In this document: positions 1,840 to 36,946 of the stretch, piece by piece
Layout of the letters: the number at the start of each line of letters is the position of its first letter
Numbering within the stretch: position 1 is the stretch's first letter
NCBI GenBank assembly: GCA_965637545.1
Contig: OZ281494.1
Location: 5,704,001-5,768,000 of the forward strand
From: Phallusia mammillata
Lineage: Eukaryota
Direction of reading: 5' to 3'
DNA: 64,000 nt
Position numbers and translations under genes: made by a program
The notes under the pieces: model-generated
Told to the model about the DNA's origin: nothing
The model's database searches: none
What the model saw: the letters and a program-made list of their open reading frames with translations, nothing else

Positions 1840-1847
1840 CTTATACG

Positions 1848-6586: not shown

Positions 6587-6737
6587 TGTGGCGACCTCTC
6601 TTGCATGTGTACAATCGTGTTTATCGAAGCGTGCGTTTTGCCTTTTTCTCGCATTGTCGTTGTTGCCTTATAAGCGCGTTTTTGTTGTTGCGCGTTCTTC
6701 TATCATCGAACTGCATTGAAATAAAGCATCCGCTTTA
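6587..6737 (+). repeat. 5' LTR
   Basis: TGTGGCGACC...CCGCTTTA. 150/151 identical to 10065-10215 (taagCgcg vs taagTgcg). AATAAA near the end. Confidence 0.97.
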
Positions 6738-10064: not shown

Positions 10065-10215
10065 TGTGGCGACCTCTCTTGCATGTGTACAATCGTGTTT
10101 ATCGAAGCGTGCGTTTTGCCTTTTTCTCGCATTGTCGTTGTTGCCTTATAAGTGCGTTTTTGTTGTTGCGCGTTCTTCTATCATCGAACTGCATTGAAAT
10201 AAAGCATCCGCTTTA
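10065..10215 (+). repeat. 3' LTR
   Basis: Matches the 5' LTR and is followed by TSD ATAT. Confidence 0.97.
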
Positions 10216-11339: not shown

Positions 11340-14300
11340 CTATGGAATCAAGAAGCTGTCAACTCTTAATAACCTTTCTCACATCTTATCTTACACTACA
11401 TCCTGCCACAATGTAAGAAATACTGAAACTGTTCCGTTTATATTAAACTCAGTGAGCGTGAAAATATATTGTGTTGTATGGAATGATATTTAGGTGTGTG
11501 TCTTATGTGGCAACAAAGTATTCTTTGCTGTGTCTGTGCAGGTTTATTTGTGCCAGAATGTGGCACTAGTTGATGGGGAGGTTTAGTTAAAGCGTTTGTT
11601 TATGGAAAGTTGCAATTCGAGTTGTAAATGTGTAGAAAGGCGACGATGTTGTTGATTATAGGCATTATTAATTTGTAATGAGAAAACATACATGTGAAGT
11701 TAAAATTAACAACTTTAGTAGCTATCCAGTAGGTTCTAGACTTTGTTTGCATAGGGGTTATTTTTAAAACGCGGTATACTGGAAAATGATTTTTACGAAA
11801 TCTAAATGTTTTATTCAATTGAGTTACTTCTTTTGTTTTAATCATTTTGTGATAAATGTTGCAACATTTATGGCTACGAAAGTAATGAGTGCTTTAAAAC
11901 TTTAAAACTACTTGTGTTTCAGTATAATTCACTTACGTGAAATCAACGATGACTGTAGCAAGGACGAATCGACGTCTTTGGATTTTTGGTACAATTTTGT
12001 GGATATCCGTCATCAAACTCTCCAAATCTCAAAGTTTGTTGACACGTCTTCTTGTTGTTTTTATAGTTACTATTATAACAATCAACTATTACACTATCGT
12101 CTTAATAAAGCCACTACTTGTTGCAACATTGTGGCTATTTGTTTCTGAGGTAAGCTGGGCTATTGGATTTAGACATATGTAATACATAACTTTTTTTGCA
12201 GGGGTCCAGACATGCTTGGCTGGCAACATGACAAAAGTGAATGCATCAATTAAACCACCTCGATCCTGCGCTCATAATACTTTGAATCTTAACGATGGAG
12301 GTAAGTTATGTGCATCTACCAAACGCGTGGCGTATCCATAGTTTAGAGTTCTTTCGGGTATCATGAAACGCGAGCGTCCCGGGGTAAAAAATGATGAGGA
12401 GATTAAAGTTGAGCACCGTGTTTTACTACAATATTATTTTATGTAAATATTATTTTATTAAATAAAGTCTGACCTAAACAAATCGTCGATATCAACACAA
12501 AACTACCTTGACCTGCGACAATAGCGGGCATTTTAATTGTGTTTTTTCAGTCTGTGTGTTTTGATAAAATGTTAGATTAGGACCAAAAGAATACTATGCT
12601 AGTAGGAATGTTGGTGTCAGTGCTTAGTTTAGATTGTTGTTGAGGAACAACCACATTGCTTTGAGCTAATAAATCAACACTATAACGTTTAAAACTGATT
12701 GTTTGGTAGAATTGTAATAGATTACGATAATTAGTTACAAGATTTGATTGAAGTCAATGCTTTGTTACAAGGTGTGGATTTGTAATATTGCATGTAATAA
12801 AATTTGTTTTCCAGATCAGTCAGCCATACAGATTGGAGGTAAGAAAAATCATTTAAAATGTTCAAAATAAGTAAAATTCTGAGGGTTAAATATTTAATTT
12901 ATTACCTTTCTTTGTTGAGGATTTTATAAATGTTCTCTGTTTTTTTATACGATTGTTTTTGGTGAGATAACAACCTTTGGCAAACGCTCTGGTGAATTCT
13001 ACCTTACGTAACTAATTTAGTTAACGAGGTTTGTTTTGGGATTGTTAAGAAAAAAACGGCAAATGCTGCTACAGCTATAGGAAAGGATCCTGCCTCGAGG
13101 CAACAACCTACCGTTTGGTGAGTGTACAAAATTAATACAGTAGTGTTTCGATTTGATAATTATGAGCAAAATATTCTGGCGAAATACATATGTATGTTTT
13201 GATATGTTCATATGTTTTGATCAGGAATGTGGAAAACATATTAGCCTAGATAAACGTAATTGTACGGAAAATGTGTGGTGTTTTTAGCGTTTGTTTTTGG
13301 CGATTGCAATGTCAAAAACCTCGAAAATTGGAACCAAGTGAATACCCTCTATCACAGCTTTAAAGTCGAAATCATAATTAAGAACGGAAATTGTAAGTAA
13401 CTTTGGTACTGTTTATGCAACATTTTTTAAAGTAAATTTTAGGTCAAAACGTTTCACGTTAAAGCTTCTCAAATAATTGTTATTAAATCAATTTGGCCCT
13501 CTGGTAAAAAAGTTTGGCCACCCCTGGTCTAATATTACACCTGATTTGGCGCAATAAGTTTTAACGGAAAACAGTAGAATTTAAAAAGTTAAAATATTCA
13601 AACATTATTAGAGATTCATATCAGCATTGGAAACTCTAAAGTTTATTGTGACAAAGACGACCGAAACGTATAATAGGACTATAAATTGAAAAAGTTCTTC
13701 GAAAATTTTACCCCACTGAACTGTGTAAACTTTCCAATTGTTTTTAGGAACCTGTTCGAAAGTGACTACTACCACGGCCATGATTTCACCCACCACAGCA
13801 TCTTCGTCTGGAGCTTCCCAAACCCATATCAGTCATAACAGCGTCAACGCAACTGTCCCACCTGGGCATAACTGTACGTCGATCACCGCAACTGAAGTTA
13901 CAACAAACGCTCAGCAGGAAGGTAACTGTTTTTTATTACTATGCTACAGGTACAAGTTGCTCGATAGTATTAAAACCAGAAGCAAAAGGTATGTGACATG
14001 TGTTTCAGAACTTCAAGACACAATAAACGAGGTTTTAGGTGGATTTGTCCAGCCCAATGCAACACAAACCAACGCAGAGTTGCTTAAAAGTTTGAAAAAG
14101 TTTGACGAGTTTGTAGTGAACTTGACCATTAACAACGCTGGCAACACAACAACCAAGTTATCGGTCCCTGGCATCGCTGAAATAGAATTCGGACAAATCC
14201 CTGACGTCAATCACATTTTTACCACCAATCTTGATTGATCAACTCAGCTACTGGAATTCAGTAGCATCGGGGGTCGTGGGAAGAGATCACCTTCTTTTAT

Positions 14301-17300
14301 TGTGTTTGTTTTCACGCAGTTTATATTCGAGCTTAGCAAGCTGCGACCGTTCTACGTTTTTCGCGACACAACCAGCTCCTTCTGGCAGATTGCAAACCAC
14401 ACATCGATTCATCCAAGCACCGCCGCCCCTTACCTACGAATTCAAGCATACCAGTTGCTTGATGGATCCCCAATCCACGTCAATGTAAAATTCAGTGTAA
14501 ACGTGATAGGTAAGTCTAACAGTTTTCATTATACACCAAAGTAGATGTCGTTAATTAGCTTCGCAGCATAGTAATCTGCTGTTGTTGTTAACGGCATGCG
14601 GGGTCATGTTACAAAATATCAGGACGCCTAGAGCGGAAATATTTGTCACAACCAGTCAGTGTTAGCTGTCTGCTATGAAAGAGACTCTTCTGATTAAAAT
14701 ACCGACTTGACGTTTATCCACATACACAATTTAACGCACACACATTACAATCCAACCTTACTGTTCTATAATATCGCTAATGAGCAAATTAAAAATAAAT
14801 TGTTACAACATTGCTGCATATAGCCGATTTTTGTATCACCCAACAATCATAAGAAATGCATGCCCACGTCGAGTCATAGAGTTTGTTTGGCAAAACAAAT
14901 GCAAAACATCTGAAATGTAGCATATTGTGTCAATAAAATGTAACTTGGTTTGCAGTTGACTCGACATTGGAGGAAGAAGCACCACGAAAGTTGTTCGACG
15001 TTTACAGATCGTGGTACAAGATATCGTGGTTTCAGTTCATCTGCTTACGTCTGGATTATAATGCAAGTCGTTTCACACGCGATGGTTGCATGGGACAGTC
15101 AGTTTACGGAATGGTGACGTGTTCGTGTGATCAACCTGGTTTCTTCACTGTGGCTCCGCAAATCGTCGCACAAGTCAGACCCGATGGAATCAGTGTAAGT
15201 CGAACCGTTCAAATGTACTTAAATTAATTTGTGTTTTTTATCCCTAGTTTTTTGGTCAATCTGTCTCAAAAAAACAACCCAGAAATTGTGTTTGTAGTTA
15301 AAAACAACAACAACATGCATTATTTTAGGTAATTTTCTTCGGTGGATTAGTAGTAGGTCTTGTCGTTCTCTTTCTCACGTGGATGGCACTTCTCAAGTTC
15401 AGTGTACAGGTGGAGTGTGACCGAATCGCAGTGCAAATAAGCTTTGTCTGTGCCCTCTTTTTTTTGCACATTGTTCTCTTGTTCGAAGGACTGTCAATAA
15501 ATGGAAAAACACAGTGTGAAATGGTCACATTTTTCTGCCATTACTTTATGATGACCACCGGTAAGTTTAAAAATATCAACTATTTATTGCTCGACTAAAC
15601 ATAACTTGCATATCCGGTATAGTCAAACATGTACAATTTTATCAAATTACTTGGCATTTGGGACTGTAATATTTTTTGTGTCAGGACTTCTGGCTCTCGC
15701 CGATGGAGCGACGATCCTCGCCAACTTGAATCCTCGATCTCTTCGATTCAAACGTCAAAATCCGGGTCGCCTCCTTCAAATTCAGCTCGCTATATGTTTG
15801 GGAATTCCCCTTATCATAGCTGTCGTCACAATTGCCGTCGCGCTTCCACAAGTCGATTACATCTCGATGAGCGAGTACGGATACGAGCGTTGCTGGATCA
15901 ATCACGGTTCCATTGCCCTTGTTGCCGGGGTAACCGTTCCCATAGCAATTATCTTTATTGCTTGTTTCTTGCTGGCAATTCTGATCGGCGCCTTTGCTTC
16001 CCGAGCAAAGCCAAACTCCCCGGACGCAGCTCACCAGGCAACCACCTATGACGCCATGACAGTTTATGACGTAGATAATGATCACGTGTTCCGGATGTTG
16101 GTGGAATACGTGATGACGTGCTTTGCTTTGCTGGTGCCGTGGATCAAGTACTTTATACCAGGTTGGTGCGTCACAAACTCAGCTTTTGCTTGGTTTATCT
16201 GTTGTAATGCAGCATTTAATGAGTAAAACATCGTTTATTTTATTTCCCAATATTACTTTAATACTGCAGTTACGTTTAGGGCATAATAAATTGTTCTTTT
16301 TCATTTCACTTGGGTGCTCCAAAATATTAAGTGTTTACACATTGTTTTTTCTTTTTAGGAATTCACAACATTGAAGTCACTCTGGCTGATATGTACGTCA
16401 CTATGACGTTAATCGGCTTACAAGGAGTTTTTGTCTTCATTATCTATGTCATCGTGAGTCCAGATGTAAGACGCACGTTCTGCGGAAAAGGCACAAATTA
16501 TCCTGAGCGGTACAAGCTTTACTGGTACGGACAAGAGAGAGATCCAGATCCAATTCCTCTTGAAACTTTTGAGGAAAACATTTAAACATTTCCTTGCCCA
16601 TGACGTGTTCGTTACGCCATGTGGGCATAATACTGTAATGACAGTTTTATATTGATGCTTTTAATACGGATTTTGAAATGTATTTTTATCTTTGTTATCT
16701 TCTGTCAGCGATAACAGAAATTCAATACAAACGTTCGCAAAAAAATTATGATTTATTTGCATTAAACTGTTGATAAACATTGCGACAGTTCGTAATGGAA
16801 GCACAAGTTGTTAAATTTCTTTTGTTTTTTTACCTTTTGTTGTTTACAATTTGATTTACAAACGTACTTTACTGTTTTTTAAGCAACATTAGGTTATTAC
16901 AACTTGACGTTAGTGTTTAATTTGTTGTTGTTTCGTTTGAACTGATTTGCATTACGATTTAAAAGTTAGTAATTTGTTCGGCGCCAAGGGCATAATTTGT
17001 CGTTTTTTATTCACGAGCTTGGTAGAGTTTATAATGTGTTTTTTACGTAATAGTAATTTCCGTTAATGTATATTATTCCCCGAATTTGAATGGCAATGTT
17101 TTTTGAGACTTTTGTTTTGACGCTATTCTTTCTCAGTCATACATATGCACCATTCTCTTTTATTTAATTGACAAGTTTTATTTTTTTTACTTTGGAATTT
17201 CTAAGCAACATTTGTCAAACAACAGGAAAATGTTTTTTACAAAAAGCATTTTTTGGCAGCTAACTTGCAAGACTTTTTGGGTTTAAGTACCTGACTAGCA

Positions 17301-17860
17301 AAACAGCATTTCTGGGTTAACACAACTCATGCACCTCAACAGGCAAAGGAATTGAGTGCTACAAATGTGCCACAGACGGAAATTACTCGAAAGAAAAGTA
17401 CAAGACAGTGATCAATCAAAAACCAAAGTACACGAAACATAATTATAAAAAATATTGGGTCACAATGTTGTACAGTGTTCATGAGGTCACGATATAAAAA
17501 ACTTATTTTTATATTTGAATATTTAAAACATCATTACAATGAGTGTAATTTTGGAATAAACCACCCTTTGCTAGAACTACCAATGGGATAAAGAAAAAGG
17601 AAGCTGTCTTGATTTTAACTGTTCCTATTGTAAAACAAGGCCAACATATAGATTATGCGGAAAAAAGCATCATGACTCAACACATTTTGTTCGAGAAATA
17701 ATTAAAATGTGGTTGAAGAAATACATGTACATGTTGTATTGGGCAACACAACAAAAATATCTCTATAAACCTAATTATCTGTTACGTTGTGCATAATTAT
17801 CACTTGAAGCGTATACAAAATAAATAAATACATGCATACTATTTAGAATCTGATATTTGA
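11340..17860. repeat. Segmental duplication, copy A (paralog of ~28289-36852)
   Basis: Homology runs from upstream non-coding sequence (CTATGGAATCAA) through all exons and many introns to CTATTTAGAATCTG. Ends are approximate. Confidence 0.9.
11949..16585 (+). pseudogene. Adhesion (class B2)-like GPCR, copy A, disabled
   Basis: Exons: ~11949-12033 (signal, uncertain), 12202-12300, 12815-12838, 13050-13117, 13288-13392, 13748-13921, 14009-14509, 14956-15194 (GPS-like), 15329-15560, 15685-16161, 16359-16585 (TM7 LQGVFVFIIY). Lesions: TGA at 14236-14238 where copy B has GGA; exon 4 is one base short at the donor; the homolog of B's 39-nt exon is not recognisable. Confidence 0.8.
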
Positions 17861-18013
17861 AAAAATTCATTGAGCTGATTGCAACTGCAATCAAAAGGAT
17901 TAAATTAAAACTAATTCGGTCAAATAGAGATTGCAATGAGATGAAATACTTTCTTCAATTCACAAATTTTTATTTTACAGTGTCATAACGTTTTTACAAT
18001 ACTGTTCTATTAG

Positions 18014-19286
18014 ACCAAAGTGACAACCGCATTAAAGTCTTGCCGCCATTTGGCGAGGTTTGTGAGGGCAATGACTACAATAGCTTTGGTGATCTTGATT
18101 TCAGGGATGTGCAAAAATATTTTAAGAGGACACCACTTTGTGTAAGTAATCTGTTAGTTTCAGTACACGAATTTGTTTTTGTTTTCCGGTTTTGTAGGAA
18201 ACGGAACCACATATGTTTTGACTTAAGGACATACCGACATTGTATCATAGGTTGCTTTAAATTTGAACATATTTGATACTGCATGGTGTTGAACTATACC
18301 AACAATTAGGGTCCCACCAACTGGAAATTTACTAAACTTACAGATTAATTTAGAGGTTAATAGGTTACACCAATTAGCAGAATAGAACAACTTTTCTGTA
18401 TAACAGATGAATAGTAAAGACGTTATGCGTTCTGCCTTGGATGACTGGATGAAACGGGATCAAGAAAAAAGTAAACGTCAGTACTTGATACAATGTGGGG
18501 AATCAACAGAAAGAGGTTAATATCGTCAATTACCAAACGAAAACAAATCGTGATTTTCACAAATCTATTATTGACCAAAATTTAATGTTGAATACAGATA
18601 GACAAATCACAGCTAACCCAATCTTCGTTAGTTAGACCAAATACCCCCAATGAGAAGCAATTATTCAATAAATGGCAGGATGTAAACAATTGTAATGTGT
18701 CAGTACCGACATTGTTATTTGTGTTTATGATGTCATGCACTGTTTTCTATTTGGTTTCCTTTCATTAGTTTATTTTTCATGACATACATATACCGTTACG
18801 ACGTAAGCTTTTTTGGTCCATGTCATATACTGATTGTATTATGCAATGATCATTTGGCACAAAAACTAAGCACAACTGTGGTACTTGTAGGATCATCGAG
18901 TCGATGCGGTTATGACTGCTCATTGTGTAGCGCTGTGGAACGACAGCCGCACCATCACCTTCAAACTTTACAGGAAACATTTCCGCTTTTTCACGACCTG
19001 ACTTGTGAGGACAGCGGGGTCGCAGTCCTTACTTGTAGGTTGTGTGCAGAACAACATGTGGTACGAGCCGATGAACAAACTTTCGAGGCAAGGTTTGTTG
19101 ACATACGATCAAAGTTCAAAACAAAAAATAATGGAAAATTTGTGGAGCATTTTACCAGCAGTGTATGGGAACCCTTCTCCAATGCAGCCTAAACTTAGCG
19201 ATTACTACTCTGTAATGTTTGTGGAACGTTCCACCGTCAAAAGGGACTGGAAAAAGAAGATCGATGCCAAAATAAATGCTAATTGA
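18014..19286 (+). pseudogene. Unidentified spliced coding-like region with two in-frame TGA codons; 5' end missing
   Basis: Phase-compatible GT-AG exons 18014-18141, 18198-18250, 18769-18802 and 18891-19286. TGA at 18219-18221 and 18999-19001. Translation includes VLPPFGEVC, DHRVDAVMTAHCVALW and GCVQNNMWYEP. Family not recognised. Confidence 0.5.
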
Positions 19287-21111
19287 CCTTTAATAGGAAA
19301 GTAAATTAAGAAAAACAACGACGTGGGTGGGATGAAAAAATCGAATATTGATGTCTTAGTAAACGTTTTTACTTGATATTTGATAATTTAGTATTTGGAA
19401 ATATATTAACCATGGTCGTAAATCAGGCCAATTTTTCCGGTCAGATTCGTATTTGCTCTTGAACAAAACAGGCTTGCTTCGGGGCTGGCTTTACACTTGG
19501 CCACGCTGTGTCGCAATTTCACTTTGGTAATTCTTAGTTTTGCGCCTAAACTGGCTCATACGTTTGGATTTCGGGCCGAGTTCAAACTCTAACTTTGCGA
19601 CCGTCTACTACTGTGACATAAAACTATAATAACTTGTATGTACTGTAGTAACTTGATTGTGAGATAAGCTGTACTTGTGAATATATCGTGTACATGACTT
19701 GTAGTTAAAATACAATCTGTGTAATGACATCATTATTTGGATTTCGAAGCTGTGTCTGTTCAGGTAGTACTCTTGCACTTGTGTTGTAGATTTAAGATTT
19801 TTTTGTAGATTTTTTTAGGGTGTATGATTTATTTCATACAAAAGCCTAATACGAAATTACTACTAAAAAAATCGATGGAGAAGGACAGTACTAAACTTGT
19901 CATGAATTCGGAATGGATGTAGAAACTGACTCAGCACGATTTGCAGCATGTGGTGAGCCACGAATCGCTACTATAAGTAGACATTTGGGCCACAGACCGA
20001 AAAACGATATTCTTGTTTATTTGGCTTTATCATTTGAAAGACTTTAGTTATTTTATCTCTCATCTTGTAAGTTGTAAGGCAAATAGGCGATTGTAAAGTA
20101 TCCTTATTTCCGTTTACATTTTAAGATTATTTGTGGTATCATAAACAGGCACAAAGTGCTAGCTAACAATACGGTTTTACAAGTCTTTTATTGACTGTTT
20201 CAATAAGTTTAAAAACACAAATCTGTCCTCTGGCTTGCAGGTGCGCCAATTCAAGACGTGCACTGTAACCTTACTTAGAACCGGTTTGAATTGCTGACTT
20301 CGAGAAGCGTTGTGGTCAAAGGCACATGGTGGATCAAGTAAATATTTTTTCTGTTTTGCTGAACAAAAGGGACGAGAAAAACATTTTCTCAAATCGACTT
20401 AAGCTATGAAACCAAGCAAACTTCGTTGCGTCACGAATAAACATCCAACCCTTGAAGGGAAACTAAAGAAAACTGCACAAATTCTTTGTGAATCTAAAGC
20501 TTCGTGAGATTAATATTATCAAGGTCAGATCACGTTTCACGCCCCATTGTCAGATCTAAGGAAGTTTGAACTCGTCGTGTGTTTAGTTTTGTATATTTTT
20601 GTTAAAATAAGTTTAAAGAAGTTGTTTTGAGTTTCTGTTTGAGCAGTGAGCTAGTGAATCGAAGTTGATTATATTTTGATGGCTACCTCGAGAAATATAA
20701 CTGTAAATTTTCAGTCTATTGCAGGTGTTAGAAATGCGTTAAACGTTAGGGATTTATATAAGCCGACGTTTCGACGTCATATACAGGTCGCTTTCATCAA
20801 GGTAAATAACACTGAATGCGCGTGGAACAAGATCAAGGATTTATTTCCTTAAAGCTGTATTTCGGATACGTTCCCTTATATAATTTAAAACGATAATCGG
20901 TTTCTATGCAAAGTTTTAAAGCAAGTCCGGTGCAATAATAAATACACTGATTTTTCATAATACTGGGTAAAATGTAAATAAGATCGATTTTCATTGATGT
21001 TTTATCGCACAATGCAAAGCCAAGTCGGTGACCAAATTATTCTCACCAACTTTGTTACCGATGTCATGTATTTAAATTTTCGCAGATTGAGTGCTGCTCG
21101 AGTATAACATA

Positions 21112-24100
21112 ATGGCCAAAGTTGGGATCCTACTGTATCTATGCTGTATTTTTATAAAACAAGGTAAGAGCTAGAGCAGGGTTTCAAATATATTAACAGC
21201 TAACGACGGTACATTATACACGAGGGTCTGAAAACCCATTTTTGGCGAAGAACATACAAAAGTTCCACAAGCGAACATTTGTTTTTGTAGTAAGCAGCGC
21301 TCCTGGTAAGTCACTCTGCAGAGAGGAGGACGGCTACCATCGCTGCGTTGGATCCAGCTTGTGTATTCCGCGGTATATGGTTCACGATTATCACCCAGAC
21401 TGCCCGGGAACTGACAAAAGCGATGAATATATGGGTTCGTGATTTGTTTTGAATGGTTGATGTGGCATATCTGCACAAGTGCATGAACATTAAATGCAAA
21501 GACATTGGGATGGTTTTGTGTCGCTTGCAGTGTTTCTTTGTGATACAAGTGCCACACAACAGCAAAACTTTATGCTGCAAAAAAATCAAATATGAAAGTT
21601 TGTAACCGGTTTTCAGAAAACTTATCAAATGAATCACTTTATAATAATTTCACTCACTATCATTATTTGTCCAAAGATTCCCTCAAATGCAATGACGATG
21701 AATTCGTCTGCCGCCTTTCAAAAAAGTGCGTACCTCGGCATCTGGTTAACACACCGGAAAGCTGCAAACTTAACGAAATCTTGGTTTTACCATGCAGGAA
21801 TGATTCAGGTAAGATGAGAGCAAAACACATTAAAAGTTATTCACAGTCAACACTCGCGTCTGGAAAAATATTGTGTCAATAAATTGGGCGACTCCATTTT
21901 CCATCAGGAGCAAACCAAAACGACTGATATGACTCGATCATTGACGTTTGTTTGTTATAGAGTTCACATGCAAGCGAAGCAGGATTTGTATTCCACGTTG
22001 GCTGGTGCAAAACGGAAAGCGTGACTGTGACACGATGGTGGTACGGGACGGAAGTGACGAAGAAATGAGTCTCGCCTCGTGCGATATCTCAGAATTCTCT
22101 TGTTTCAAAAACAACACTGCTCCCCTGCAATGCATTCCAAGAGAATGGGTTCTGGACGGCGTAAATGACTGCACAAATGGACGGGATGAAGTTGACAAGT
22201 TGACAAGTTGTCACAATGACACTGAATTTCGATGCCAGACAAATGGGAGATGTGTGGCAAGATATCGAGTATTAGATGGATTTAACGATTGTCCCGATGC
22301 TTCTGATGAGAAGCAAGCTCTCAAATGCAGTCCAGACAAAGAGTTCCAATGCAGCGACAACGGTCGTTGTATTCCTCGCTCGTGGCGAGGCAACACATTC
22401 GTGAACTGCAAAGACGGAAGTGACGAAGTTCCGTTGACAATGAGCGACACTTGTGTGGAGGGAGAGTTCCGTTGCAACAACAGCAAGCGATGCATTCCCA
22501 ACTACTTGTTGTGCGACGGCATGGATCACTGCGGTGACTGCAGCGATGAGATTGAGAGCTGCAACGAGCCGAGGATGATTCGCTGCTCAAATGATCCTGG
22601 CACTTGCGTTGTCCGGACTTACTCGTGTGATGAATACTCAGATTGTCCAGGAAGTACCGAGGACGTGCGACAAGTTACCGGTTTTAAATGTAACAAGCAG
22701 ATCGCTGGGCTTGACAATCGCCTTGAATACTGCGTAATTCCACAATGGTCGTTAACAGACGAATATCCAAACTGCCAAGACTCATCCGACTTATGTTTTG
22801 TAAACGGAACTTTCAATTGTCACCGCTGTCTGTATTCTGACATCATCATCTCACCAAAGCAGTTGTGTGACGGAATTTTCGACTGTCCAGATGTCACAGA
22901 CGAATGCCTTTGCGCACAGAGTGTCCCAGCATCGGCTTCGTCAAGATATCTGTGTGATAATGTTTGCAACGGAGTCCCTGGAAGCTCACCCTGCATTTTC
23001 TGTAGTCAAGGACAAGTTAAATGCGGTTCTGAAAACGTTTGTATTGCCAAGTCGCAAGTTTGTGACGGTAGAGTAGATTGTCCAATCACGAAGCTTGACG
23101 AGCTGAATTGTGGGAAACAGACCAAACAGAGCAGCATCATAAATATTCCTGACTTTCAATGCAACGTCATTAATTCTGAAGTACGAGCTTTTGCTACACT
23201 TGTTATAGACAAGGACCTTGTTAACTCTTTTGTTCCAGTTCAAGCTAAAAGGTAAGATCAAGTCTTCGAATTAAAAGCAAAACAGTAAATCGGAAATACA
23301 ACTTCCGAAAAAAAATAAAAATTCACTGCGGTACAATTTTGGCTCTTACAAAATATATTTTGCAAAACTTTATAGTTTTAGATTCGACGACAAAACGAAA
23401 ATGCAAGATAAAATCTTGTGTGCTTTGTACTTTGCAGGTGTGATGGTATTGTTGAATGTTCTGTGTTTGAAGACGAATGCAGCGAAAGAGCAAACTGCAG
23501 AAACCGACTTTCAGTGTGCGACCAAATTGCCGGTCATCACGTAAGTTTTATAATCTCAAAAAATCTCATTTGCAACATCAAATGGTTATTATTTCTATGC
23601 TGATTCCAGAAGTTCAATTATTTCGGTTTTGCGTTACAGCCTTTTCCTAGTTTGACTCAGTACTTTGTTGTCTTTTGTCACGACAAAGCACAAAGTGAAG
23701 ACAAAGCACGCACAGTGATCACGGTGTGTATTTGTTTATGATTTTCAGTTCCAAGTTCCTGCAAGTATGATTGGAGGTCAGCAAGTATGGTTTGAATTGA
23801 GAAAGTGCACTCCGTTGTTGGACCTAATCTTCGGTAAATCGGTTTGCAACGGGATAGACGAATGCAGAGAAGGATACGACGAAACAAATTGCCCCAACCA
23901 CTTTAAGTGCAACGCCGGCAAAGTGAGCTCTATACTTCAAGGTAATATTTAAAGTTTGTGTACCTAAGATTTATTCTGGAGAAAGTAAGAAAGTTTTTTT
24001 GTTTTTTAACTTCGTTAGCAACACTTTTCTTAACATCGTCAGCAAAACATCGTTTTAATAGTCACACATTTAGAGCAAAAAACTAAACCTCAGTTGTCAA

Positions 24101-26593: not shown

Positions 26594-26879
26594 TTTAACT
26601 TCGTCGCACTTTTGCACATCACCATCGCGTAAGTCATGATTTACATAAAATCCCGCGATAGAGGGTTGGTGAACGCGAAAAACCATCAGATCAAAAGAAT
26701 GCAGAAGAAAATCACAGTTCTCATAGCAACCGACTTCTATTGTTGGTTGCCGATTTGCATCATGACTTTTATGAGCATTCCAGGTCACATTTTGACCTCA
26801 GACTCTTACGCAGTTTCAGCGATCGTCCTCCTTCCCATCAACAGCTCACTTAACCTAATCTTACACAGGCCATCTACAC
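26594..26879 (+). pseudogene. Duplicated TM5-TM7 fragment of the LDLa-GPCR
   Basis: Aligns to 25404-~25690. TAT changed to TAA at 26630-26632, NPxxY disrupted, and interrupted by a MITE. Confidence 0.9.
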
Positions 26880-27201
26880 CATGGGTTCTTAACAAGGGTA
26901 TGTGTACCCCTTGGGGGTACGAAGTATCAAAGTCGCGGGTACGACATGCAGGCTGAAATTATATGCTATTTAGGCATATTTGTAAAGAATGCGTAACAAG
27001 TTGCTTTGTTATATGTCTAGAGCAGGTTAGTTTTGTCTTACTTAAAAATATTGTTTTCATGCATGCATTCAACACCCAAGTTATATTACACTTACTTTAA
27101 TTCCTTTCATTACAAATTTATTTACTTCCGTCGGCTATTGTAGACAGGGTACCAGAAAATTTTATAAAATTTACGAGTGCAAAAAAGGTTAAGAAACACT
27201 G
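26880..27201. mobile_element. hAT (Charlie-like) MITE, 322 bp
   Basis: Imperfect TIRs CATGGGTTCTTAAC and GTTAAGAAACACTG. 8-bp TSD ATCTACAC at 26872-26879 and 27202-27209. Confidence 0.88.
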
Positions 27202-28698: not shown

Positions 28699-31600
28699 AT
28701 GGATCGACGACTTTTGATTTGCTGTGTTATTCTGTGTCTCTCCACTATCGAAGGCTGTTCTGGTGCTTGTTGCAACACAGTTTTGTTGTTTGCTGGATTA
28801 TAAAACTATATAAACTATAGACTATACAAGCTACCCTTAATTTAGCTTGAATCTGCTTTGACAATCATTGAATAACTGAAGATAAAATAATACTTTGGTT
28901 TTTGACACGTCAGCGTAATAAAATAACTCCGATCTTTGCAATATCAAAAGCTATTTTGTTCCAAGGAAGTTATGGAATTCACTAACATTTCTACTTAAAC
29001 GTATGTGCAGGGACTCAGACATGCTTATCTGGTTCCCCGTCGTCAGTGGACGCATCGATTCAATCACCCCGATCCTGTGATGATAATACTTTGAAACTTA
29101 TTGATGGAAGTAAGTTATGTGTATCCGAAAATTGCGTGGCGTACCTAGATCAAATTTATTCATCCGACGTCCTCTGTAACCCTATTGTTATGGGACAGAA
29201 AATAATAAATTAAATCAACAAAGTACTATTACTATATTATTATTTAAAAGTCAAAAAAGGCTATTTGTTGTTGATACTCGACCATAAAAAATCGTGACAT
29301 TAACACGGTTGTACACTGAAAACAAATTAAGCTTAAGGTAACACAAATAAAATTTGCTATAAATGCTTTGGTAACTGTTGTTCGGAATCATTCACCATTC
29401 TTGTTCGGAATCATTCACCTTTCTTAATAAATAAACATAGAACATTAAGTTAATTTTATTTTACTAATTGCACCCAATATTCTTAAAAGTCGACAATCTG
29501 CTACAAACAAGGATGGCAGTACGGTACGGTACGTATTGCGTTGACCGTACCACGTACCTCGTTACGTAGAGCGTACCGTACCACCGTACCGTACCAAATG
29601 TCAAAAATCAAAGCGTACCGTACCACCGTACCGTACTCAAGGTACGGTACGAAAATTTGCGTACCGTACCTTCAAATAAACCAATCGGGATTAAGTTGGA
29701 TACATTTTATGTCAATATAACATGCACTTAAAGGAGAGTTGTCTAAACTCTATACAAGCTGTCCCATTACAACCAGCTTATTCGAAATGAAAGGTTGATC
29801 CGTTTTCTACGATGGGCTCGTGCAGTGACAGTGTGTAATTTTCAACAGCATATTTCTTTAAATCATTGGTGCGGAAGAGACTACAACACTAGCTAGCTTT
29901 TTCAACTAACTGAAGAATCAATTACAAATGCCGAGTTAATCTCTGTTCTTGTCATGTGCGCGTTTTAATAATACGGCTGTACGTGTAACCACAGGCGCCG
30001 AGTTTTGTAAAAATGCAAGGTGGCGGACGTAAATTGTGACGTCACTTTTTGTAACGTCACTAATGCGTACAAGCACACGAACCCACTTTAAAGCCCAAGA
30101 AACTTTCAATAGAATGTAACATTCGTTAAATTCTTGAAAAAACATTTCTTTAAAAAAATATTTAGTTGAAACAATTTGCTATAACGTTTTATTCGTTTAA
30201 CAACGTTTAGAAAATGTTTCATCAAATTGTTGCTCCTGTATCACCTTAAGTCTAAACCAACCATTCATTACAGTACAATCGCATTGTACATAATAGTGGC
30301 CATACATTCACTGTCAACAATTTGTTTGACGTCATAAACAAAGCTCTAACCAAAACACGTTGTAGTTAACATCCGTTTTGTTGCTTTTTTGTCAGCATGC
30401 TTGTTTAGTTTCCAAATTTCTCCAGATTTTACGATGTTTCGTACTATACCGCTACAAACAAATCAAAATTTTCGCAGTGGCCGCCACCGTACTTCACAAA
30501 CTCACCCCACCACCGCCCACTCGGCAGTCGTCGCCTATGCGTGTAACCCTCCTTCTGCATAGTAAGCACACATTATTAAGCAGTGACGTTCTAAACTTTT
30601 TTGAGCCCTATTTTGATACAGGGAACTGTGATGAAATCATGTTTCAAACAACTTAAATTCAAGTTTCAGACAAATTTGATATTATCTGCAAATGGTAACG
30701 ATTCAAAAATGACCGTTTAATCAACGTTTAATATGCGTACCAGTACGGTGGTACGGTACGCTTTTACGCTCTAGTGATCGACCGTACCACGTACCGTACC
30801 CGTACCTCAGCTTTCTTTGCGTACCGTACCTACGTACCGTACTTTTTGATGAAATTTGCTGCGTACCGTACCGTACCGTACCATCGTACCGTACCGTACC
30901 GTACTGCCATCCTTGGCTACAAAGAGTGGTTTTGTAATCATTCATTATAATTAAATTTGCTTTTCAGATCAGAAAAGTTCAGCAATAACGGTTGGAGGTA
31001 AAATAATATTTAAAAATTCTGAACGTGGCTTTTTGAGTTTTTAATATTTAATCTATAATTGACCAAATGTTGGTTATGTTAAATTTTCGTAAATAACCGC
31101 TGTTTCAAATAAGATTGTATTTTGAATTTTATTATTTACCTATGTATAAATATTTAATTTAATGATTTCGGATTGCAGTAAAGAACGGCGAATGCTGCTA
31201 CACATATTCTAAAGGAGCTTGCCACGAAGCAGGAGTCTATCGTTTGGGTAAGCGTGCAAAAAGAATATTGTATTTTTTCGTTTGATTGTAACAGCAAAAT
31301 ATTGTGGCATGATAATATACCTTTAATTTAACCATACAAAAAATAGCCTAAACCTAACATTATAGTTAATTATGAAATAAATTATATGCGGATGTTGTAG
31401 CACGGTGTAGCACCACAGGTGCAAATAGTTTACAAACCTCATGTGTCTCATGTGTCGTGTTTTTAGCGTATTTCGGGGGAAGCGATTGCAAAATCAAAAA
31501 CATTGGAGAGTGGAACCAAGTAAACCATAACCTCTACCGCATCTTTAAAGTCGATGCCATACTTAAGAACGGAGATAGTAAGTTGGCTTGTTACTGTTTA

Positions 31601-34600
31601 TGCAACATTTTTTTCTTATTTAGCAGCCGAACAATTTGTCAAGTCAAAACATTCAAGTTCATGTTCTTTAATTAAAAACAAAGTAACCCTCACCCAAGTC
31701 AAAGATATAAATAGTAATGGTAAAGCAGTATGAAAAATTGTGTTAGTTACATGGTTAAAAACTAATGAATTTTTTAAGTAATGAATTTTTAATAAAACTC
31801 ATACTTTTTTAACGTAATTCAATAATATTATTATTTTTGGTTACAGCTGCAATAGAATTTACTGTGAAGCCGTGCATTGTATCAGGTATGTAGCAATGAG
31901 TGAAACGGCCATTGTTAATAAGCCATGTAACATAAATGATAAGCCAAGCTTATAAAAAACTTTCTCATTAGCATGTGCAAAAAAGTTTATTGTGATTATG
32001 AATATGATTTGAGACCCTTATTAGTAAAAAGCATCAAAAAAGCATTTTAAGGTATAGATAGGCTTTTCAATTAAAAAAAGTCTTTTATTTTTTTCATTTT
32101 GAAAAATGATGTAACTTAAGAGTTGCTTTGACAAAAACTTAAAAACACTATCGTAGATTGTGTGACTTATAAATAATCTTTTCAGCAACATGTTCCGAAG
32201 AAGCTTCGATCACGGCCATAACTTCACCCCCCACAGTATCCATGTCTCATCCTTCCCAAACCCAGTATTTTAACAACAGCGTCAACGCAACTGTCCCACC
32301 TGGGTATAACTGTACCCCAATTATATCTTCAACCACCCCAGCCGTCAATCCAAGCACCCCCACAATGAACCTATCTTCAAGAACCGTGATCTCAACCACC
32401 CTTAACGTTAATTTGAGTACCCCCACAATAGACGCAACTACTAAAATCCAAATTACCCAAGCCGTTAGTCCGGCGGAGTCATCTACTCAATCCGTCTTTC
32501 CAATTAACACCACCGCAACTGAAGTTAGTGCAAACGAGAAAAAACAAACCACGCAGCAGGAAGGTAAAATTTGTAGTGCTATGTTTAGGACAGGTTGCTC
32601 TACAGTTTGTCGAAACAGAAGTGAAAAGTATGTGAAATTGTTTTTCAGAACTTCAAGCCACGATAAACGAGGTTCTGGGTGGATTCGTCCTGCCCAATGT
32701 AACACAAACCAATGCAGAGTTGCTAGCAAACTTGAAACAGTTTGACGAGTTTATATTGAACTTGACCATCAACAACGTTGGCAACACAACAACCAAGTTA
32801 TCGGTCCCTGGCATCGCTGAAATGGAATTCGGACAAATCCCTGACGTCAATCACATTTTTACCACCAATCTTGATGGATCAACTCAGCTACTGGAATTCA
32901 GTAGCATCGGGGGTCGTGGGAAGAGATCTCCTACTATCATTGTGTTTGTTTTCACGCAGTTTATATTCGAGCTTAGCAAGCTGCGACCGTTCTACGTTTT
33001 TCGCGACACAACCAGCTCCTTCTGGCAGATTGCAAACCACACATCGATTCATCCAAGCACCACCACCCCTTATCTGGGTATTCAAGCGTACAAGTTACTT
33101 GATGGATCCCAAATCGACGTCAATGTAAAATTCAGTGTAAACGTGACAGGTAAGTCCAACAGTTTTCATTATAAACCAAAGCAGAGGTCGTTAATTAGCT
33201 TCGCAGCATAGTAAGCTGCTGTGGTCGTTAACGGCATTTGGAGTCATGTTACAAAATATCAGGACGCCTAGAGCGGAAATATTTGTCACAACTAGTCAGT
33301 GTTAGCTGTCTGCTATGTAAGAGACTCTTCTGATTATAATACCGACTTGACGTTTATCCACATACACAATTTAACGAACACACATTATAATCCAACCTTA
33401 CTGTTCTATAATATCGCTAATGAGCAAATTAAAATTAATTGTTGTAACATTGCTGCATAAAGACGATTTTTGTAACATCCAACAATCCTAAGAAATGCCG
33501 GCCCATGTCGAGTCATAAAGCTTGTTTGGCAAAACAAATACAAAACCGCCGATAATGTAGTATATTGTGTCAATAAAATGTAACTTGGTTTGCAGTTGAC
33601 TCGACGTTGGAGAAAGAAGCACCACGAAAGTTGTTCGACGTTTACAGATCGTGGTACAAGATATCGTCGTTTCAGTTTATCTGCTTACGTCTGGATTATA
33701 ATGCCAGTCGTTTCACACGCGATGGTTGCATGGGGCAGTCAGTTTACGGAATGGTGACGTGTTCGTGTGATCAACCTGATTTCTTCACTGTGGCTCCACA
33801 AATCGTCGCACAAGTCAGACCCGATGGAATCAGTGTAAGTCGAAGAGTTCAAATACACTTAAATTATTTTGTGCTTTTTATCCCTAGTTTTTTGGTCAAT
33901 CTGCCTCAAAAAACAACCCAGAAATTGTGTTTGTAGTTAAAAACAACAACAACAACATGCATTTTTTTAGGTAATTTTCTTCGGTGGATTGGTAGTGGGG
34001 CTTGTCGTTCTCTTTCTCACGTGGATGGCACTTCTCAAGTTCAGTGTACAGGTGGAGTGTGACCGAATCGCAGTGCAAATAAGCCTTGTCTGTGCCCTCT
34101 TTCTTTTGCACATTGTTCTCTTGTTCGAAGGACTGTCAATAAATGGAAAAACACAGTGTGAAGTGGTCGCATTTTTCTGCCATTACTTTATGATGACCAC
34201 CGGTAAGTTTAAAAATATCAACTATTTATTGCCCGACTAACATAACTTGCATATCCGGTAAACATAACTTGCATATCCGGTATAGTCAAACATGCACAAT
34301 TTTATCAAATTACTTGGCATTTGGGACTGTAATATTTTTTGTGTCAGGCCTTCTGGTTCTGGCCGATGGAGCGACGATCCTCGCCAACTTGAATCCTCGA
34401 TCTCTTCGATTCAAACGTCAAAACCCGGGTCGCCTCCTTCAAATTCAGCTCGCTATATGTTTGGGAATTCCCCTTATCATAGCTGGCGTCACAATTGCCG
34501 TCGCGCTTCCACAAGCCGGTTACATCTCGATGAGCGAGTACGGATACGAGCGTTGCTGGATCAATCACGATTCCATTGCCCTTGTTGCCGGGGTAACCGT

Positions 34601-35249
34601 TCCCATAGCAATTATCTTTATTGCTTGTTTCTTGCTGGCAATTCTGATCGGCGCCTTTGCTTCCCGAGCAAAGCCAAACTCCCCGGACGCAGCTCACCAG
34701 GCAACCAGCTATGACGCCATGACAGTTTATGACGTAGATAATGATCACGTGTTCCGAATATTGGTGGAATACGTGATGACGTGCTTTGCTTTGCTGGTGC
34801 CGTGGATCAAGTACTTTATACCAGGTTGGTGCTTTACAAACTTAGCTTTTGCTTGGTTTATCTGCTGTAATGCAGCATTTAATGAGTAAAACATCGTTTA
34901 TTTTATTTCCCAATATTACTTTATTACTGCAGTTACGTTTAGGACATAATAAATTGTTCTTTTTCACTTCACTTGGGTGCTCCAAAATATTAAGTGTTTA
35001 CACATTTTTATTTTATTTTTAGGAATTCACAACATTGAAGTCACCCTAGCTGATATCTACGTCACTATGACGTTAATCGGCTTACAAGGAGTTTTTGTCT
35101 TCATTATCTACGTCATCGTGAGTCCAGATGTAAGACGCACGTTCTGCGGAAAAGGCACAAATTATCCTGAGCGGTACAAGCTTTACTGGTACGGACCAGA
35201 GAGAGATCCAGATCCAATTCCTCTTGAAACTTTTGAGGAAAACATTTAA
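28699..35249 (+). CDS. Adhesion (class B2)-like GPCR, copy B, apparently intact: signal - Cys-rich domain - mucin stalk - GAIN-like - 7TM
   Basis: Exons: 28699-~28762 (MDRRLLICCVILCLSTIEG; donor uncertain), 29011-29109, 30968-30997, 31179-31247, 31467-31577, 31847-31885, 32186-32563, 32649-33149, 33596-33834, 33971-34202, 34348-34824, 35023-35249. All are phase-compatible and open from exon 2 to the stop. Confidence 0.85.
29508..30915. mobile_element. hAT-type non-autonomous element (1408 bp) in an intron of GPCR B
   Basis: TIR CAAGGATGGCAGTACGGTACGGTACG at both ends. 8-bp TSD GCTACAAA at 29500-29507 and 30916-30923. Subterminal GTACG/CGTAC arrays. Confidence 0.93.
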
Positions 35250-36946
35250 ACATTTCCTTGCCCATGACGTGTTCGTTACGCCATGTGGGCATAATACTGT
35301 AATGACAGTTTTATATTGATGCTTTTAATACGGATTTTGAAATGTATTTTTATCTTTGTTATCGTCTGTCATAAAATTATGATTTATTTGCATTAAACTG
35401 TTGAAAACATTGCGACAGTTCGTAATGGGAGCACAAGTTGTTAAATTTCTTTTGTTGTTTAGAATTTGATTTACAAACGTACTTTACTGTTTTTTAAGCA
35501 ACATTAGGTTATTAAAACCTGAAGTAAGTGTTTAATTTGTTGTTGTTTCGTTTGAACTGATTTGCATTAGATTGAAAAATCAGTAATTTGTTCGGCGTCA
35601 AGGACATAATTTGTCGTTTTTTATTCACGAGCTTGATAGAGTTTATAATGTGTTTTTTACGTAATAGTAATTTTTGTTAATGTATATTATTCCCCGAATT
35701 TGAATGGCAATGTTTTTTGAGACTTGGTTTTGTTTTGACGCTATTCTTTCTCAGTCATATCTATGCACCATTCTCTTTTATTTAATTGACAAGTTTTATT
35801 TTTTCACTTTGGAATTTCGACTTCAGCATGCTTGAGTTTAATAGTTCGGTGATGTAACAAAGTTTGGTATTTTGGCAATTAAAATCATTTAGGGAGTTCT
35901 TAAAAAACTAATGTTACCAAGGATTGTGATTTCTGTGTTTGATTTTGGGATAGAGATTTTGCATGTTGTGTTGTCGTTCGTTTTCGTGCAAAGTGCTGCT
36001 CAGATTTTATACGTTATAATCGATTATAATCGTTAGTATTACATTTGAATGAGACGAAATAAGGTAACAATAAAATAATATTTGTGATTTGGTGAACAAC
36101 AAAAGTGTGGAGCGTTACATAAAAAAAATCATAAAAAGATAATGAGGTCTTTCAAAACTATACTTCAAAAACGTGTGAGATTCAATTTATTGGCGTATGT
36201 GACACACATACAGTTAATTAGGAAAGTTAAAAATCAAGCTAAACAACTACGTATGTACAAGAATAAGCAACAATTGTCAAAAACAGGGAAAGATTCTTTA
36301 CAAAAGCATGTGTTTTGCCAGCTAACTTGCAAGACCTTTTGGGTTTAAGTACCTGACCAGCAAAACAGCATTTTCTGGGTTAAGGCAACTCATGCACCTC
36401 ACCAGGCAAAGGATTTGAGTGCTACAAATGTGCCACAAACTAAAGTTGTATGAAAGAAAAGAAATGTATAACAGTGATACATCAGAAAACAGAGTGCACA
36501 AAACACAATTATAAAAAAAATTGGGGTCTCATTGTAGAACAGTGTATGAAGTCTTATAAAAAAACAAACCAAAAAAATCATCACAAAGGGTGTAATTATA
36601 GAATAAACCGACCTCTACCAAAAGTACTAATGAATAAATAAAGATTATATGGGAAAAAGCACCATGACTCAGCACATTTTGGTTGGGAAATAATTAAAAT
36701 GTGGTTGAAGAAATACATGTACATGTTGTATTGCACAGCACAACAAACATATCTTTAAAATCTTAATTATTTATTACATTGTGCATAATTATTACTTGAG
36801 GTGTAAACAATATGAACAAATACAAGCATACTATTTAGAATCTGCTATTTGAATTAAAAAGCATTAAAGCACTTGCATAGAATGTTAAGCATCTTTGAAT
36901 ATCTGGGTAGGTTGAATCCATCCTGGTACTGGATTTACACAAGAGA

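What the first reader, a model, noticed from the sequence alone, without database searches (positions are those of the whole stretch)
11340..36852. Duplicated adhesion GPCR pair: divergent ectodomains on homogenised GAIN-7TM halves
By manual count, exon 2 differs at 27/99 nt (13 of 32 codons change amino acid). A GAIN tract (14141-14288 vs 32781-32928) differs at only 2/148 and the last exon at 5/227. Introns and the 3' UTR are also nearly identical in the 3' half, and near-identical tracts alternate with more diverged ones inside exon 7. Near-identical introns favour gene conversion or a chimeric duplication over purifying selection alone. The result would be a constant signalling module with diversified sensing tips, as seen in immune and allorecognition receptor families (inference). 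This is the best candidate for an undescribed system in the window.
Basis: partly seen in the sequence, partly recalled or inferred. Interest (0 to 1): 0.72.

Follow-up and report, generated by a model that had tools for sequence, protein, structure and literature searches.

The report
Sea-squirt adhesion receptor duplicates exchanging sequence
Two neighbouring copies of a sea-squirt-specific adhesion-type receptor gene (one broken, one intact) are about 25% different in the part encoding the outer tip but only about 4% different in the rest, because tandem copies keep copying sequence into each other; this is a clear example of a well-known process, not a new kind of system.

Summary

The genome is Phallusia mammillata or a very close relative. 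Both genes are divergent adhesion GPCRs with 11 coding exons. They encode a signal peptide, a Cys-rich N-terminal cassette on small phase-1 exons, a mucin-like stalk, a GAIN-like region with a degenerate GPS (QPG/QPD instead of HL-T), and a 7TM.

Three points change the reading:
- **Copy A is a pseudogene.** It has a 1-nt deletion in exon 4 and a TGA in exon 7. Copy B is intact (808 aa).
- **High identity is not confined to the signalling half.** It covers the rest of an ~18.3-kb tandem unit, including an LDLa-repeat rhodopsin GPCR gene and intergenic DNA. It is shared with paralogs 185 kb away, in a mosaic whose nearest neighbour switches (PHI P<=0.0005).
- **The cassette also sits on a second backbone.** That backbone is only ~30% identical in protein.

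Gene conversion or unequal crossover is supported. An immune-like system of diversified sensors is not shown, since cassette dN/dS is about 1 and not above it. The scan reported a similar array elsewhere in this genome (s1-410946).

The parts
11297..11543 (+). Conserved non-coding block upstream of gene A, probably promoter or 5' UTR. It is not a coding exon.
   Evidence: It is 72-74% identical to the equivalent blocks of B, C and D. B, C and D have an in-frame stop there, and the phase would not fit exon 2.
11949..12033 (+). Gene A exon 1: signal peptide, phase-1 donor
   Evidence: An ATG is followed by a hydrophobic stretch. The exon is homologous to the signal-peptide exons of B-E.
12202..13392 (+). 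Gene A Cys-rich cassette: E2 12202-12300, E3 12815-12838, E4 13050-13117, E5 13288-13392. E4 is 68 nt where all paralogs have 69, which is a 1-nt deletion and a frameshift.
   Evidence: Exon mapping with AG/GT sites. DNA-run contigs cover 11300-13519 with no differences.
13748..13921 (+). Gene A exon 6: Ser/Thr/Pro-rich stalk with N-glycosylation sites. It is 58 codons in A and 89-126 in intact B-D.
14009..14509 (+). Gene A exon 7 (GAIN-like region), with an in-frame TGA at 14236-14238 where B-E read GGA
   Evidence: In run X3 the T is seen at about single-copy depth.
14956..15194 (+). Gene A exon 8: GPS-like motif. The core at 15120-15146 reads CSCDQPGFF, so the HL-T/S cleavage triad is replaced by QPG.
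   Evidence: Pfam GPS scores 17.1 bits, below the 22.5 cut-off. Alignment with canonical GPS proteins.
15329..16585 (+). Gene A 7TM exons: E9 15329-15560, E10 15685-16161, E11 16359-16585 including the stop
   Evidence: tblastn to Phallusia and Clavelina aGPCRs. A cDNA contig confirms the junction 16161|16359.
13902..17201 (+). High-identity tract of A. Per 150-nt window it is 87-99% identical to B (mostly 93-99% from about 14100). It is also 86-100% identical to paralog C and 81-98% to D, in mosaic fashion.
17202..27200 (+). Rest of the tandem repeat unit after A. It holds an LDLa-repeat rhodopsin-type GPCR gene (ORFs 21948-23255 and 24192-25820). To about 26000 it is 88-98% identical to the spacers after paralogs C and D, and about 86% to C and D beyond.
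28699..35249 (+). Gene B, intact 808-aa model: E1 28699-28762, E2 29011-29109, E3 30968-30997, E4 31179-31247, E5 31467-31577, E6 32186-32563, E7 32649-33149, E8 33596-33834 (GPS core 33760-33786, CSCDQPDFF), E9 33971-34202, E10 34348-34824, E11 35023-35249
32543..35818 (+). High-identity tract of B, the partner of A 13902-17201
35819..36263 (+). 445-bp stretch present in B, C and D but absent from A. It marks the 3' end of the A-B near-identity.
36264..36865 (+). Downstream flank of B. It is only 74-85% identical to A 17202-17871, whereas A is 96-98% identical to C and D there.

Best explanation
The window holds two members of a Phallusia-specific tandem family of highly derived adhesion GPCRs. 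A (11949-16585) is a recent pseudogene. B (28699-35249) is intact.

Each gene encodes, in order:
- a signal peptide;
- a ~100-aa Cys-rich cassette on small symmetric phase-1 exons;
- a variable-length mucin-like stalk;
- a GAIN-like region whose GPS has lost the His-Leu-Thr/Ser cleavage triad, so it is probably not autoproteolysed (inferred);
- a class-B-type 7TM.

The genes sit in ~18.3-kb tandem units, each with an LDLa-repeat rhodopsin GPCR gene. Non-allelic homologous recombination repeatedly overwrites most of the unit among copies in two clusters 185 kb apart. The process is mainly short-tract interlocus gene conversion, with some unequal crossovers. This leaves a mosaic at 88-100% identity.

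The ~5-kb segment holding the promoter and cassette exons E1-E6 is not overwritten. It keeps the older divergence: about 15-20% among B-E, and 25% or more for A.

Why the cassette segment escapes is inferred, not shown. Either its own divergence now blocks heteroduplex formation, or converted cassettes are selected against. The cassette has also been recombined onto a second, deeply divergent aGPCR backbone, so chimeric gene formation is part of the family's history.
For: **Organism and family**
- A Phallusia mammillata protein maps at 94-99% to another chromosome of this genome.
- Exon 10 finds Phallusia and Clavelina aGPCRs at 6e-30 to 2.5e-12, and these carry Pfam 7tm_2 and GPS.
- A model of the Phallusia relative P0002, built with this family's exons in its alignment, hits GAIN crystal structures first.

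**Gene models and lesions**
-.

**Step in neutral divergence**
- 7TM dS is 0.043 for A-B and 0.028 for A-C, against cassette dS of 0.48 and 0.37.
- Introns are 93-98% identical in the tract, against unalignable or 70-76% in the 5' half.

**Mosaic**
- Informative sites cluster as AB|CDE, then ACD|BE, then ABE|CD, then ABC|DE along 3.2 kb.
- PHI is P<=0.0005 at three window sizes.
- Segment trees differ.
- D is 98-100% identical to C in E7-E9 but keeps dS of 0.17-0.18 in E9-E11.

**Whole-unit identity**
-.

**No closer donor for A's 5' half**
- Nothing closer exists anywhere in the genome.

**Second backbone**
- Genes D0, C' and Z carry the cassette at 80-84% nt identity on a backbone 27-33% identical in protein, with a canonical GPS.
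- In these genes cassette and backbone are about equally diverged, which serves as an internal control.

**Transcription**
- A spliced cDNA contig carries a template-switch oligo end.
Against: - There is only one genome and one haplotype. No orthologous array from another species is available to show that paralogs cluster by species.
- Segment trees have moderate support (60-100%) because only five sequences are compared.
- Single unequal crossovers could explain some of the larger blocks.
- The TGA in A is supported at about single-copy depth in one DNA run but was not seen among the contigs laid from the other. It could be heterozygous.
- The GAIN fold is shown only through a low-confidence model (pLDDT 61, TM 0.28-0.30) of a 26-47% identical relative.
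- The paralog that produced the cDNA contig could not be identified.
Confidence: 0.8

Rival explanations
1. This is a selected modular receptor system. Conversion is favoured because it keeps one signalling chassis constant, while diversifying or balancing selection keeps many different sensing cassettes, as in immune or allorecognition receptor families.
For: - Six or more cysteines and several scaffold residues are invariant while the positions between them vary.
- Cassette dN/dS is 0.8-1.35 among B-E, against 0.24-0.43 in the 3' half.
- The cassette is reused on two backbones.
- The stalk length varies.
Against: - dN is about equal to dS and to intron K, with no pair significantly above 1 (maximum Z 1.6).
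- Homogenisation also covers intergenic DNA and a neighbouring unrelated gene, so it is not directed at the chassis.
- Two of the five type-1 genes are pseudogenes. Of the three genes on the second backbone, one has decayed and one has a doubtful splice site.
- There are no data on polymorphism or tissue expression.
Confidence: 0.12
2. There is no ongoing conversion. A few recent unequal crossovers or partial duplications placed young 3' half plus spacer segments behind older 5' cassettes, giving purely chimeric duplication.
For: - Chimeras clearly exist, since the same cassette sits on two backbones.
- High identity extends over 12 kb or more of the unit.
- Breakpoints cluster near intron 6 and the start of exon 7.
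Against: - The nearest neighbour switches at least six times within 3.2 kb, with tracts of 100-400 bp.
- D is near-identical to C in E7-E9 yet old in E9-E11.
- Ordinary tandem duplication would also copy a cassette, yet no two cassettes are closer than 87%.
Confidence: 0.06
3. The 3' identity is an assembly artefact, either read collapse or consensus blending of paralogs.
For: - Short-read contigs fragment in the tract, and their summed depth is about 10 times the single-copy depth.
- The window has a true gap artefact at 1154-1353.
Against: - A and B differ at about 4% of sites, including private variants.
- Each copy is flanked by unique sequence that is reproduced without error in read contigs.
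- Five copies at distinct loci show structured, non-random site patterns.
Confidence: 0.02

Closest known systems
TLR1/TLR6 partial gene conversion (PMC2077338)
   Same: These are tandem receptor paralogs. The membrane-proximal and signalling part is repeatedly homogenised by gene conversion while the ligand-binding N-terminal part diverges, with fairly sharp boundaries.
   Different: In TLR1/TLR6 the pattern was shown in nine species and both genes are functional. Here there is one genome, five or more copies, and two pseudogenes. The homogenised zone also extends beyond the gene into the neighbouring gene.
EMR2 (ADGRE2) chimera maintained by conversion with CD97 and EMR3 (as summarised in PMC2077338 and PMC2720389)
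   Same: It is an adhesion GPCR in a tandem cluster whose parts have different nearest paralogs because of gene conversion.
   Different: The polarity is opposite. In EMR2 the ectodomain (EGF repeats) is homogenised with CD97 and the 7TM resembles EMR3. Here the 7TM half is homogenised and the ectodomain cassette stays distinct.
Lineage-specific 'unclassified' adhesion GPCRs and LDLRR-GPCRs of Ciona (PMC2396169)
   Same: The Ciona paper describes ascidian-specific aGPCR expansions, most with only a GPS domain recognisable, and a family of LDLa-repeat rhodopsin GPCRs. Both gene types sit side by side in this repeat unit.
   Different: That paper does not describe tandem units, conversion, or this Cys-rich cassette. 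The proteins here are not in public protein sets, where the best hit is 41% identical.
Gene/pseudogene conversion pairs such as CYP21A2/CYP21A1P (from general knowledge, not checked here)
   Same: A pseudogene in a tandem unit stays nearly identical to its functional neighbour through conversion. It could pass its lesions on to that neighbour.
   Different: No transfer of A's lesions into B, C or D is seen here.
Earlier scan finding s1-410946 (same genome, 1.67 Mb upstream)
   Same: It is a tandem aGPCR array with swapped outer modules and sequence exchange. It contains intact and broken copies and was judged an ordinary fast-evolving family.
   Different: It lies on different DNA and I did not re-examine it.

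Membership tests
Adhesion GPCR (class B2) | Seven-helix domain of the secretin/adhesion type (Pfam 7tm_2) | tested here: met
Exon-wise Pfam hits are sub-threshold: 15.7 and 17.4 bits against a cut-off of 20.6. However, exon 10 matches P0001 at 6e-30 and P0003 at 2.5e-12 by phmmer. Those proteins carry 7tm_2 at 7e-19 and 2.4e-33.
Adhesion GPCR (class B2) | GAIN domain immediately N-terminal of TM1 | tested here: inconclusive
   There is no Pfam or PDB sequence hit for exon 7. A model was made of the relative P0002:100-470, which is 26-47% identical to these exons and had them in its alignment. It gives GAIN structures as the top Foldseek hits (4dlo, 8ikj, 8oek, 8vy2; E about 1e-5, probability 1.0). 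The model pLDDT is 61 and the TM-scores are 0.28-0.30.
Adhesion GPCR (class B2) | GPS motif with four cysteines just before TM1 | tested here: inconclusive
   The four Cys align with canonical GPS proteins. Pfam GPS scores 17.1 and 14.9 bits against a cut-off of 22.5. Both conserved Trp residues are replaced.
Adhesion GPCR (class B2) | Autoproteolysis consensus His-Leu-Thr/Ser | tested here: not met
   The triad reads Gln-Pro-Gly in A, C, D and E and Gln-Pro-Asp in B. The second-backbone genes and the third aGPCR in the window keep His-Leu-Thr. Cleavage itself cannot be tested with these tools.
Interlocus gene conversion / concerted evolution | Paralog identity step that includes introns, UTR and synonymous sites | tested here: met
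Interlocus gene conversion / concerted evolution | Mosaic, phylogenetically incongruent tracts among paralogs | tested here: met
   Clustered site patterns, PHI P<=0.0005, differing segment trees, and nearest-neighbour switches along the 13-kb unit.
Interlocus gene conversion / concerted evolution | Paralogs within a species are more alike than orthologs between species | not testable with these tools
   No related ascidian genome is available. Public proteins give nothing closer than 41%.
Diversifying receptor families (immune / allorecognition type) | dN significantly above the neutral rate in the sensing domain | tested here: not met
   Among B-E, cassette dN/dS is 0.79-1.35. With D0 and C' included, dN is 0.13-0.25, dS 0.12-0.21 and intron K 0.14-0.30, with Z<=1.6. 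Power is low at 99 codons, and no site models were run.
Diversifying receptor families (immune / allorecognition type) | High allelic polymorphism and expression in blood cells or at contact surfaces | not testable with these tools
   Only contigs of a few runs were available. One cDNA contig shows that the subfamily is transcribed, but not where.
Pseudogene (copy A) | Disabling lesions in an otherwise conserved exon set | tested here: met
   E4 is 68 nt against 69 nt in all six other cassettes that keep an open frame. A has TGA at 14236-14238 against GGA in four paralogs.

The most novel reading that the evidence does not exclude
The small Cys-rich cassette may be a germline-variable recognition module of ascidians. 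On this reading it is kept diverse among tandem copies, and perhaps among individuals, by selection. It is moved between unrelated adhesion-GPCR backbones by recombination, while conversion keeps each signalling chassis uniform. That would make it a GPCR-based variable receptor repertoire for self/non-self, gamete or settlement cues.
Probability: 0.1. Interest if true: 0.7.

Novelty: new member of a known kind. Interest (0 to 1): 0.35.

Why it matters
It gives a clean, well-bounded invertebrate example of partial concerted evolution in a receptor gene family. It also shows that the apparent constant module is a by-product of unit-wide homogenisation rather than evidence of design.

It documents an unannotated Phallusia aGPCR subfamily with three features of interest:
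- a novel Cys-rich N-terminal cassette;
- a GPS that has lost its cleavage triad, which is useful for the question of whether uncleaved aGPCRs signal through a tethered agonist;
- reuse of the cassette on two deeply divergent backbones.

Practically, it warns annotators on two points. Copy A looks intact in its 3' half but is dead. Paralog trees built from the 7TM of such arrays are misleading.

Tried and rejected
B, C and D carry an in-frame stop there, and the phase does not fit exon 2. The real first coding exon is 11949-12033.
- **Orphan 5' cassettes D0, C' and Z as protocadherin-like alternative first exons: rejected.** Each has its own, different GAIN-7TM backbone downstream.
- **A recent donor for A's 5' half elsewhere in the genome: none found.** The best match is 73-82% in exon-sized patches.
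- **Assigning the cDNA contigs to a paralog: failed.** The mismatch counts fit B, but the kinds of change fit neither B nor C.
- **GENECONV-like longest-run test: partly uninformative.** It was significant for C-D. Several other top runs were caused by paralog E losing homology at 17150-17201.
- **PDB sequence searches with exons 7 and 10: nothing useful**.
- **Test for dN above intron divergence: not significant**.
- **Joined protein searches: not done.** Only exon-wise references and a public relative were used.
Full report
**What is in the sequence**

Self-comparison of the window shows that A (11358-17871) and B (28317-36865) are direct repeats on the + strand. One block, 13902-17201 against 32543-35818, is 92.5% identical with gaps counted. 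5' of it only exon-sized patches of 73-79% align.

A global alignment gives 89-99% per 200 bases from about 14010 to 17201. It then meets a 445-bp stretch present only in B (35819-36263), followed by 74-83%.

In the 3' half, introns 7-10 are 92.6-98.4% identical and the 3' UTR stretch is 96.6%. Introns 1, 4 and 5 are 70-76%, which is near the level of unrelated sequence in a global alignment.

**Organism and family**

- Exon 10 of A was searched against 1.84 billion representative proteins and found only ten relatives. The best two are 'adhesion G-protein coupled receptor D1-like' proteins of Phallusia mammillata at 39-41% identity (6e-30). Next are Clavelina proteins.
- One of the Phallusia proteins maps to chromosome C5 of this genome at 94-99%. 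The genome is therefore P. mammillata or a very close relative.
- The relatives carry Pfam 7tm_2 and GPS. The window's own exons reach these models only below threshold.
- The window's own proteins are not in public protein sets.

**Gene models**

Models came from multiple alignment of five paralogs, splice sites, reading phase and tblastn. Each gene has 11 coding exons:

| Exon | Content |
|---|---|
| E1 | signal peptide |
| E2-E5 | ~100-aa cassette with six invariant Cys, on small symmetric phase-1 exons |
| E6 | Ser/Thr/Pro-rich, N-glycosylated stalk, 58 to ~147 codons |
| E7 | GAIN-like region, 501 nt |
| E8 | GPS-like motif |
| E9-E11 | 7TM and tail |

A cDNA contig ending in a template-switch oligo confirms the E10/E11 junction 16161|16359. 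This shows that the subfamily is transcribed. The paralog of origin could not be settled.

The GPS keeps four Cys but reads Gln-Pro-Gly or Gln-Pro-Asp where cleaving receptors have His-Leu-Thr/Ser. Autoproteolysis is therefore unlikely; this is inferred.

A model of the Phallusia relative P0002, with this family's exons in its alignment, finds GAIN crystal structures as its top matches. Confidence is low, with pLDDT 61 and TM 0.28-0.30.

**Copy A is a pseudogene**

- E4 of A is 68 nt, whereas all other cassettes with an open frame have 69 nt. Because the neighbouring exons are phase 1, this shifts the frame.
- E7 carries TGA at 14236-14238, where B, C, D and E read GGA.
- Read contigs of two DNA runs cover 11300-13519 without any difference. 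In one run the T of the TGA is present at about single-copy depth.
- B (808 aa), C (773 aa) and D (804 aa) have open frames. E has frameshifts in E6 and E10.
- A's private changes in E7-E11 are 8 synonymous and 14 non-synonymous, not clearly different from B's 11 and 12. Its death looks recent, or it is still being refreshed from live copies.

**The wider picture**

The same 3' tract has exactly four other copies at 88% or more in the genome: B, plus C, D and E about 160-200 kb upstream of A. More distant clusters match at 72-86% in exons only.

The 10 kb between A and B are homologous along their whole length to the DNA after C and after D. They contain an LDLa-repeat rhodopsin-type GPCR gene (Pfam Ldl_recept_a 9.5e-44, 7tm_1 1.9e-18). 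This is the LDLRR-GPCR type described as a Ciona innovation (PMC2396169).

Per 500 bases, the A, C and D units are 86-99% identical from 13900 to about 27000, and the closest pair switches repeatedly. The near-identity is therefore a property of the ~18.3-kb repeat unit, not of the GAIN-7TM module. The exception is the ~5-kb promoter-to-E6 segment.

**Recombination**

Within 13970-17201 there are 124 informative sites. Their patterns are clustered along the tract in this order: AB|CDE, ACD|BE, ABE|CD, ACD|BE, ABC|DE, ABE|CD, and then a long run of ABC|DE.

The pairwise homoplasy index is far below its permutation mean (P<=0.0005 at three window sizes), and segment trees differ.

Synonymous divergence tells the same story:

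| Comparison | dS |
|---|---|
| 7TM, among A, B and C | 0.03-0.04 |
| 7TM, each of these against D | 0.17-0.18 |
| Cassette, among B-E | 0.14-0.21 |
| Cassette, A against the rest | 0.32-0.49 |

D is nevertheless 98-100% identical to C across E7-E9. The background age of the B-E duplications is thus about dS 0.15-0.2. Parts of the unit have since been overwritten in patches.

Purifying selection cannot explain identical introns and intergenic DNA. Collapse cannot explain 4% structured differences. A's 5' half has no closer relative anywhere in the genome.

**The cassette is itself mobile**

Three further genes carry the same E1-E5 cassette, 80-84% identical in nucleotides to those of B-E. This is as close as B-E are to one another. 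The genes are D0 and C' in the upstream cluster and Z, 34 kb upstream of A.

Their 3' halves are a different aGPCR backbone, only 27-33% identical in protein. It has Pfam GPS at 3.1e-9, 7tm_2 at 2.4e-16 and a canonical His-Leu-Thr site. Z is decayed, and C' has a doubtful E2 acceptor.

In these genes cassette and backbone are about equally diverged. This serves as an internal control for the step seen in the A-E type. I first read these three as orphan alternative first-exon cassettes and dropped that reading once their own backbones were found.

**Selection on the cassette**

- Among B-E, dN/dS is 0.79-1.35, against 0.24-0.43 in the 3' half.
- With D0 and C' included, dN (0.13-0.25) equals dS (0.12-0.21) and intron divergence (0.14-0.30). 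No pair is significantly above neutrality (maximum Z 1.6).
- The cysteines and a set of scaffold residues are invariant.
- This fits a mix of constrained and fast sites. It is compatible with diversifying selection but equally with relaxed constraint.

**Comparison with what is known**

- Partial conversion that keeps the signalling half of tandem receptors alike while the ligand-binding part diverges is documented for TLR1/TLR6 (PMC2077338).
- An adhesion GPCR kept chimeric by conversion is known in EMR2, with the opposite polarity (as summarised in PMC2077338).
- Ascidian-specific aGPCR expansions with little more than a GPS domain are known from Ciona (PMC2396169).
- An earlier finding of this scan (s1-410946) describes a similar array 1.67 Mb away and judged it an ordinary fast-evolving family. 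I did not re-examine that DNA.

**Verdict**

Gene conversion and chimeric recombination are supported. The functional reading as a diversified sensor system is not shown. It is weakened by the pseudogene, by unit-wide homogenisation and by omega of about 1. This is a new member of a known kind and of moderate interest.

Noticed in passing
window 1-2932 and C1:5703575-5704000: A 1579-bp stretch is repeated exactly on both sides of the 200-N gap at 1154-1353. Window 1-1153 equals 1780-2932, and the 426 bases before the window equal 1354-1779. These look like unmerged contig ends, which is an assembly artefact.
   Followed up: partly
window 3646-4424 and C1:5699279-5703608: A satellite with a period of about 373 bp. 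At least 11 copies lie just upstream of the window and about two inside it (84-90% identity).
   Followed up: no
window 6587-6737 and 10065-10215: A 151-bp direct repeat at 99.3% brackets a GC-rich (45-49%) stretch of about 3.3 kb. It may be an LTR-type element.
   Followed up: no
window 21948-25820 (+): An LDLa-repeat plus rhodopsin-type 7TM gene of the LDLRR-GPCR kind described in Ciona. It is part of the same tandem unit and 90-99% identical per 500 bases to the copies after paralogs C and D.
   Followed up: partly
window ~56700-60200 (+): A third adhesion GPCR with a canonical GPS (Cys-x-Cys-Asn-His-Leu-Thr at ~57.5 kb). It is 45-60% similar to the second backbone type. It has no cassette of the E2-E5 type upstream, apart from one weak E5-like hit at 52705-52758.
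   Followed up: partly
window 13490-13532: A 43-bp dispersed repeat with 95-100% identical copies on all large chromosomes. Read depth there is about 100 times single copy.
   Followed up: no
C1:5503996-5508680 (L041/L032), C1:5549036-5555000, C1:5679467-5684600 (L043): Genes D0, C' and Z carry the same Cys-rich cassette joined to a different, cleavage-competent aGPCR backbone. Z is decayed, and C' has a doubtful exon-2 acceptor.
   Followed up: partly
window 29500-30930: A 1.4-kb insert specific to B in intron 2, with short GTACCGTAC-type repeat arrays near both ends. It is absent from D and E.
   Followed up: no
window 13748-13921 vs 32186-32563: The stalk exon E6 varies from 58 to about 147 codons among paralogs. 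The variation comes from gain or loss of Ser/Thr/Pro-rich repeats that carry N-glycosylation sites.
   Followed up: partly
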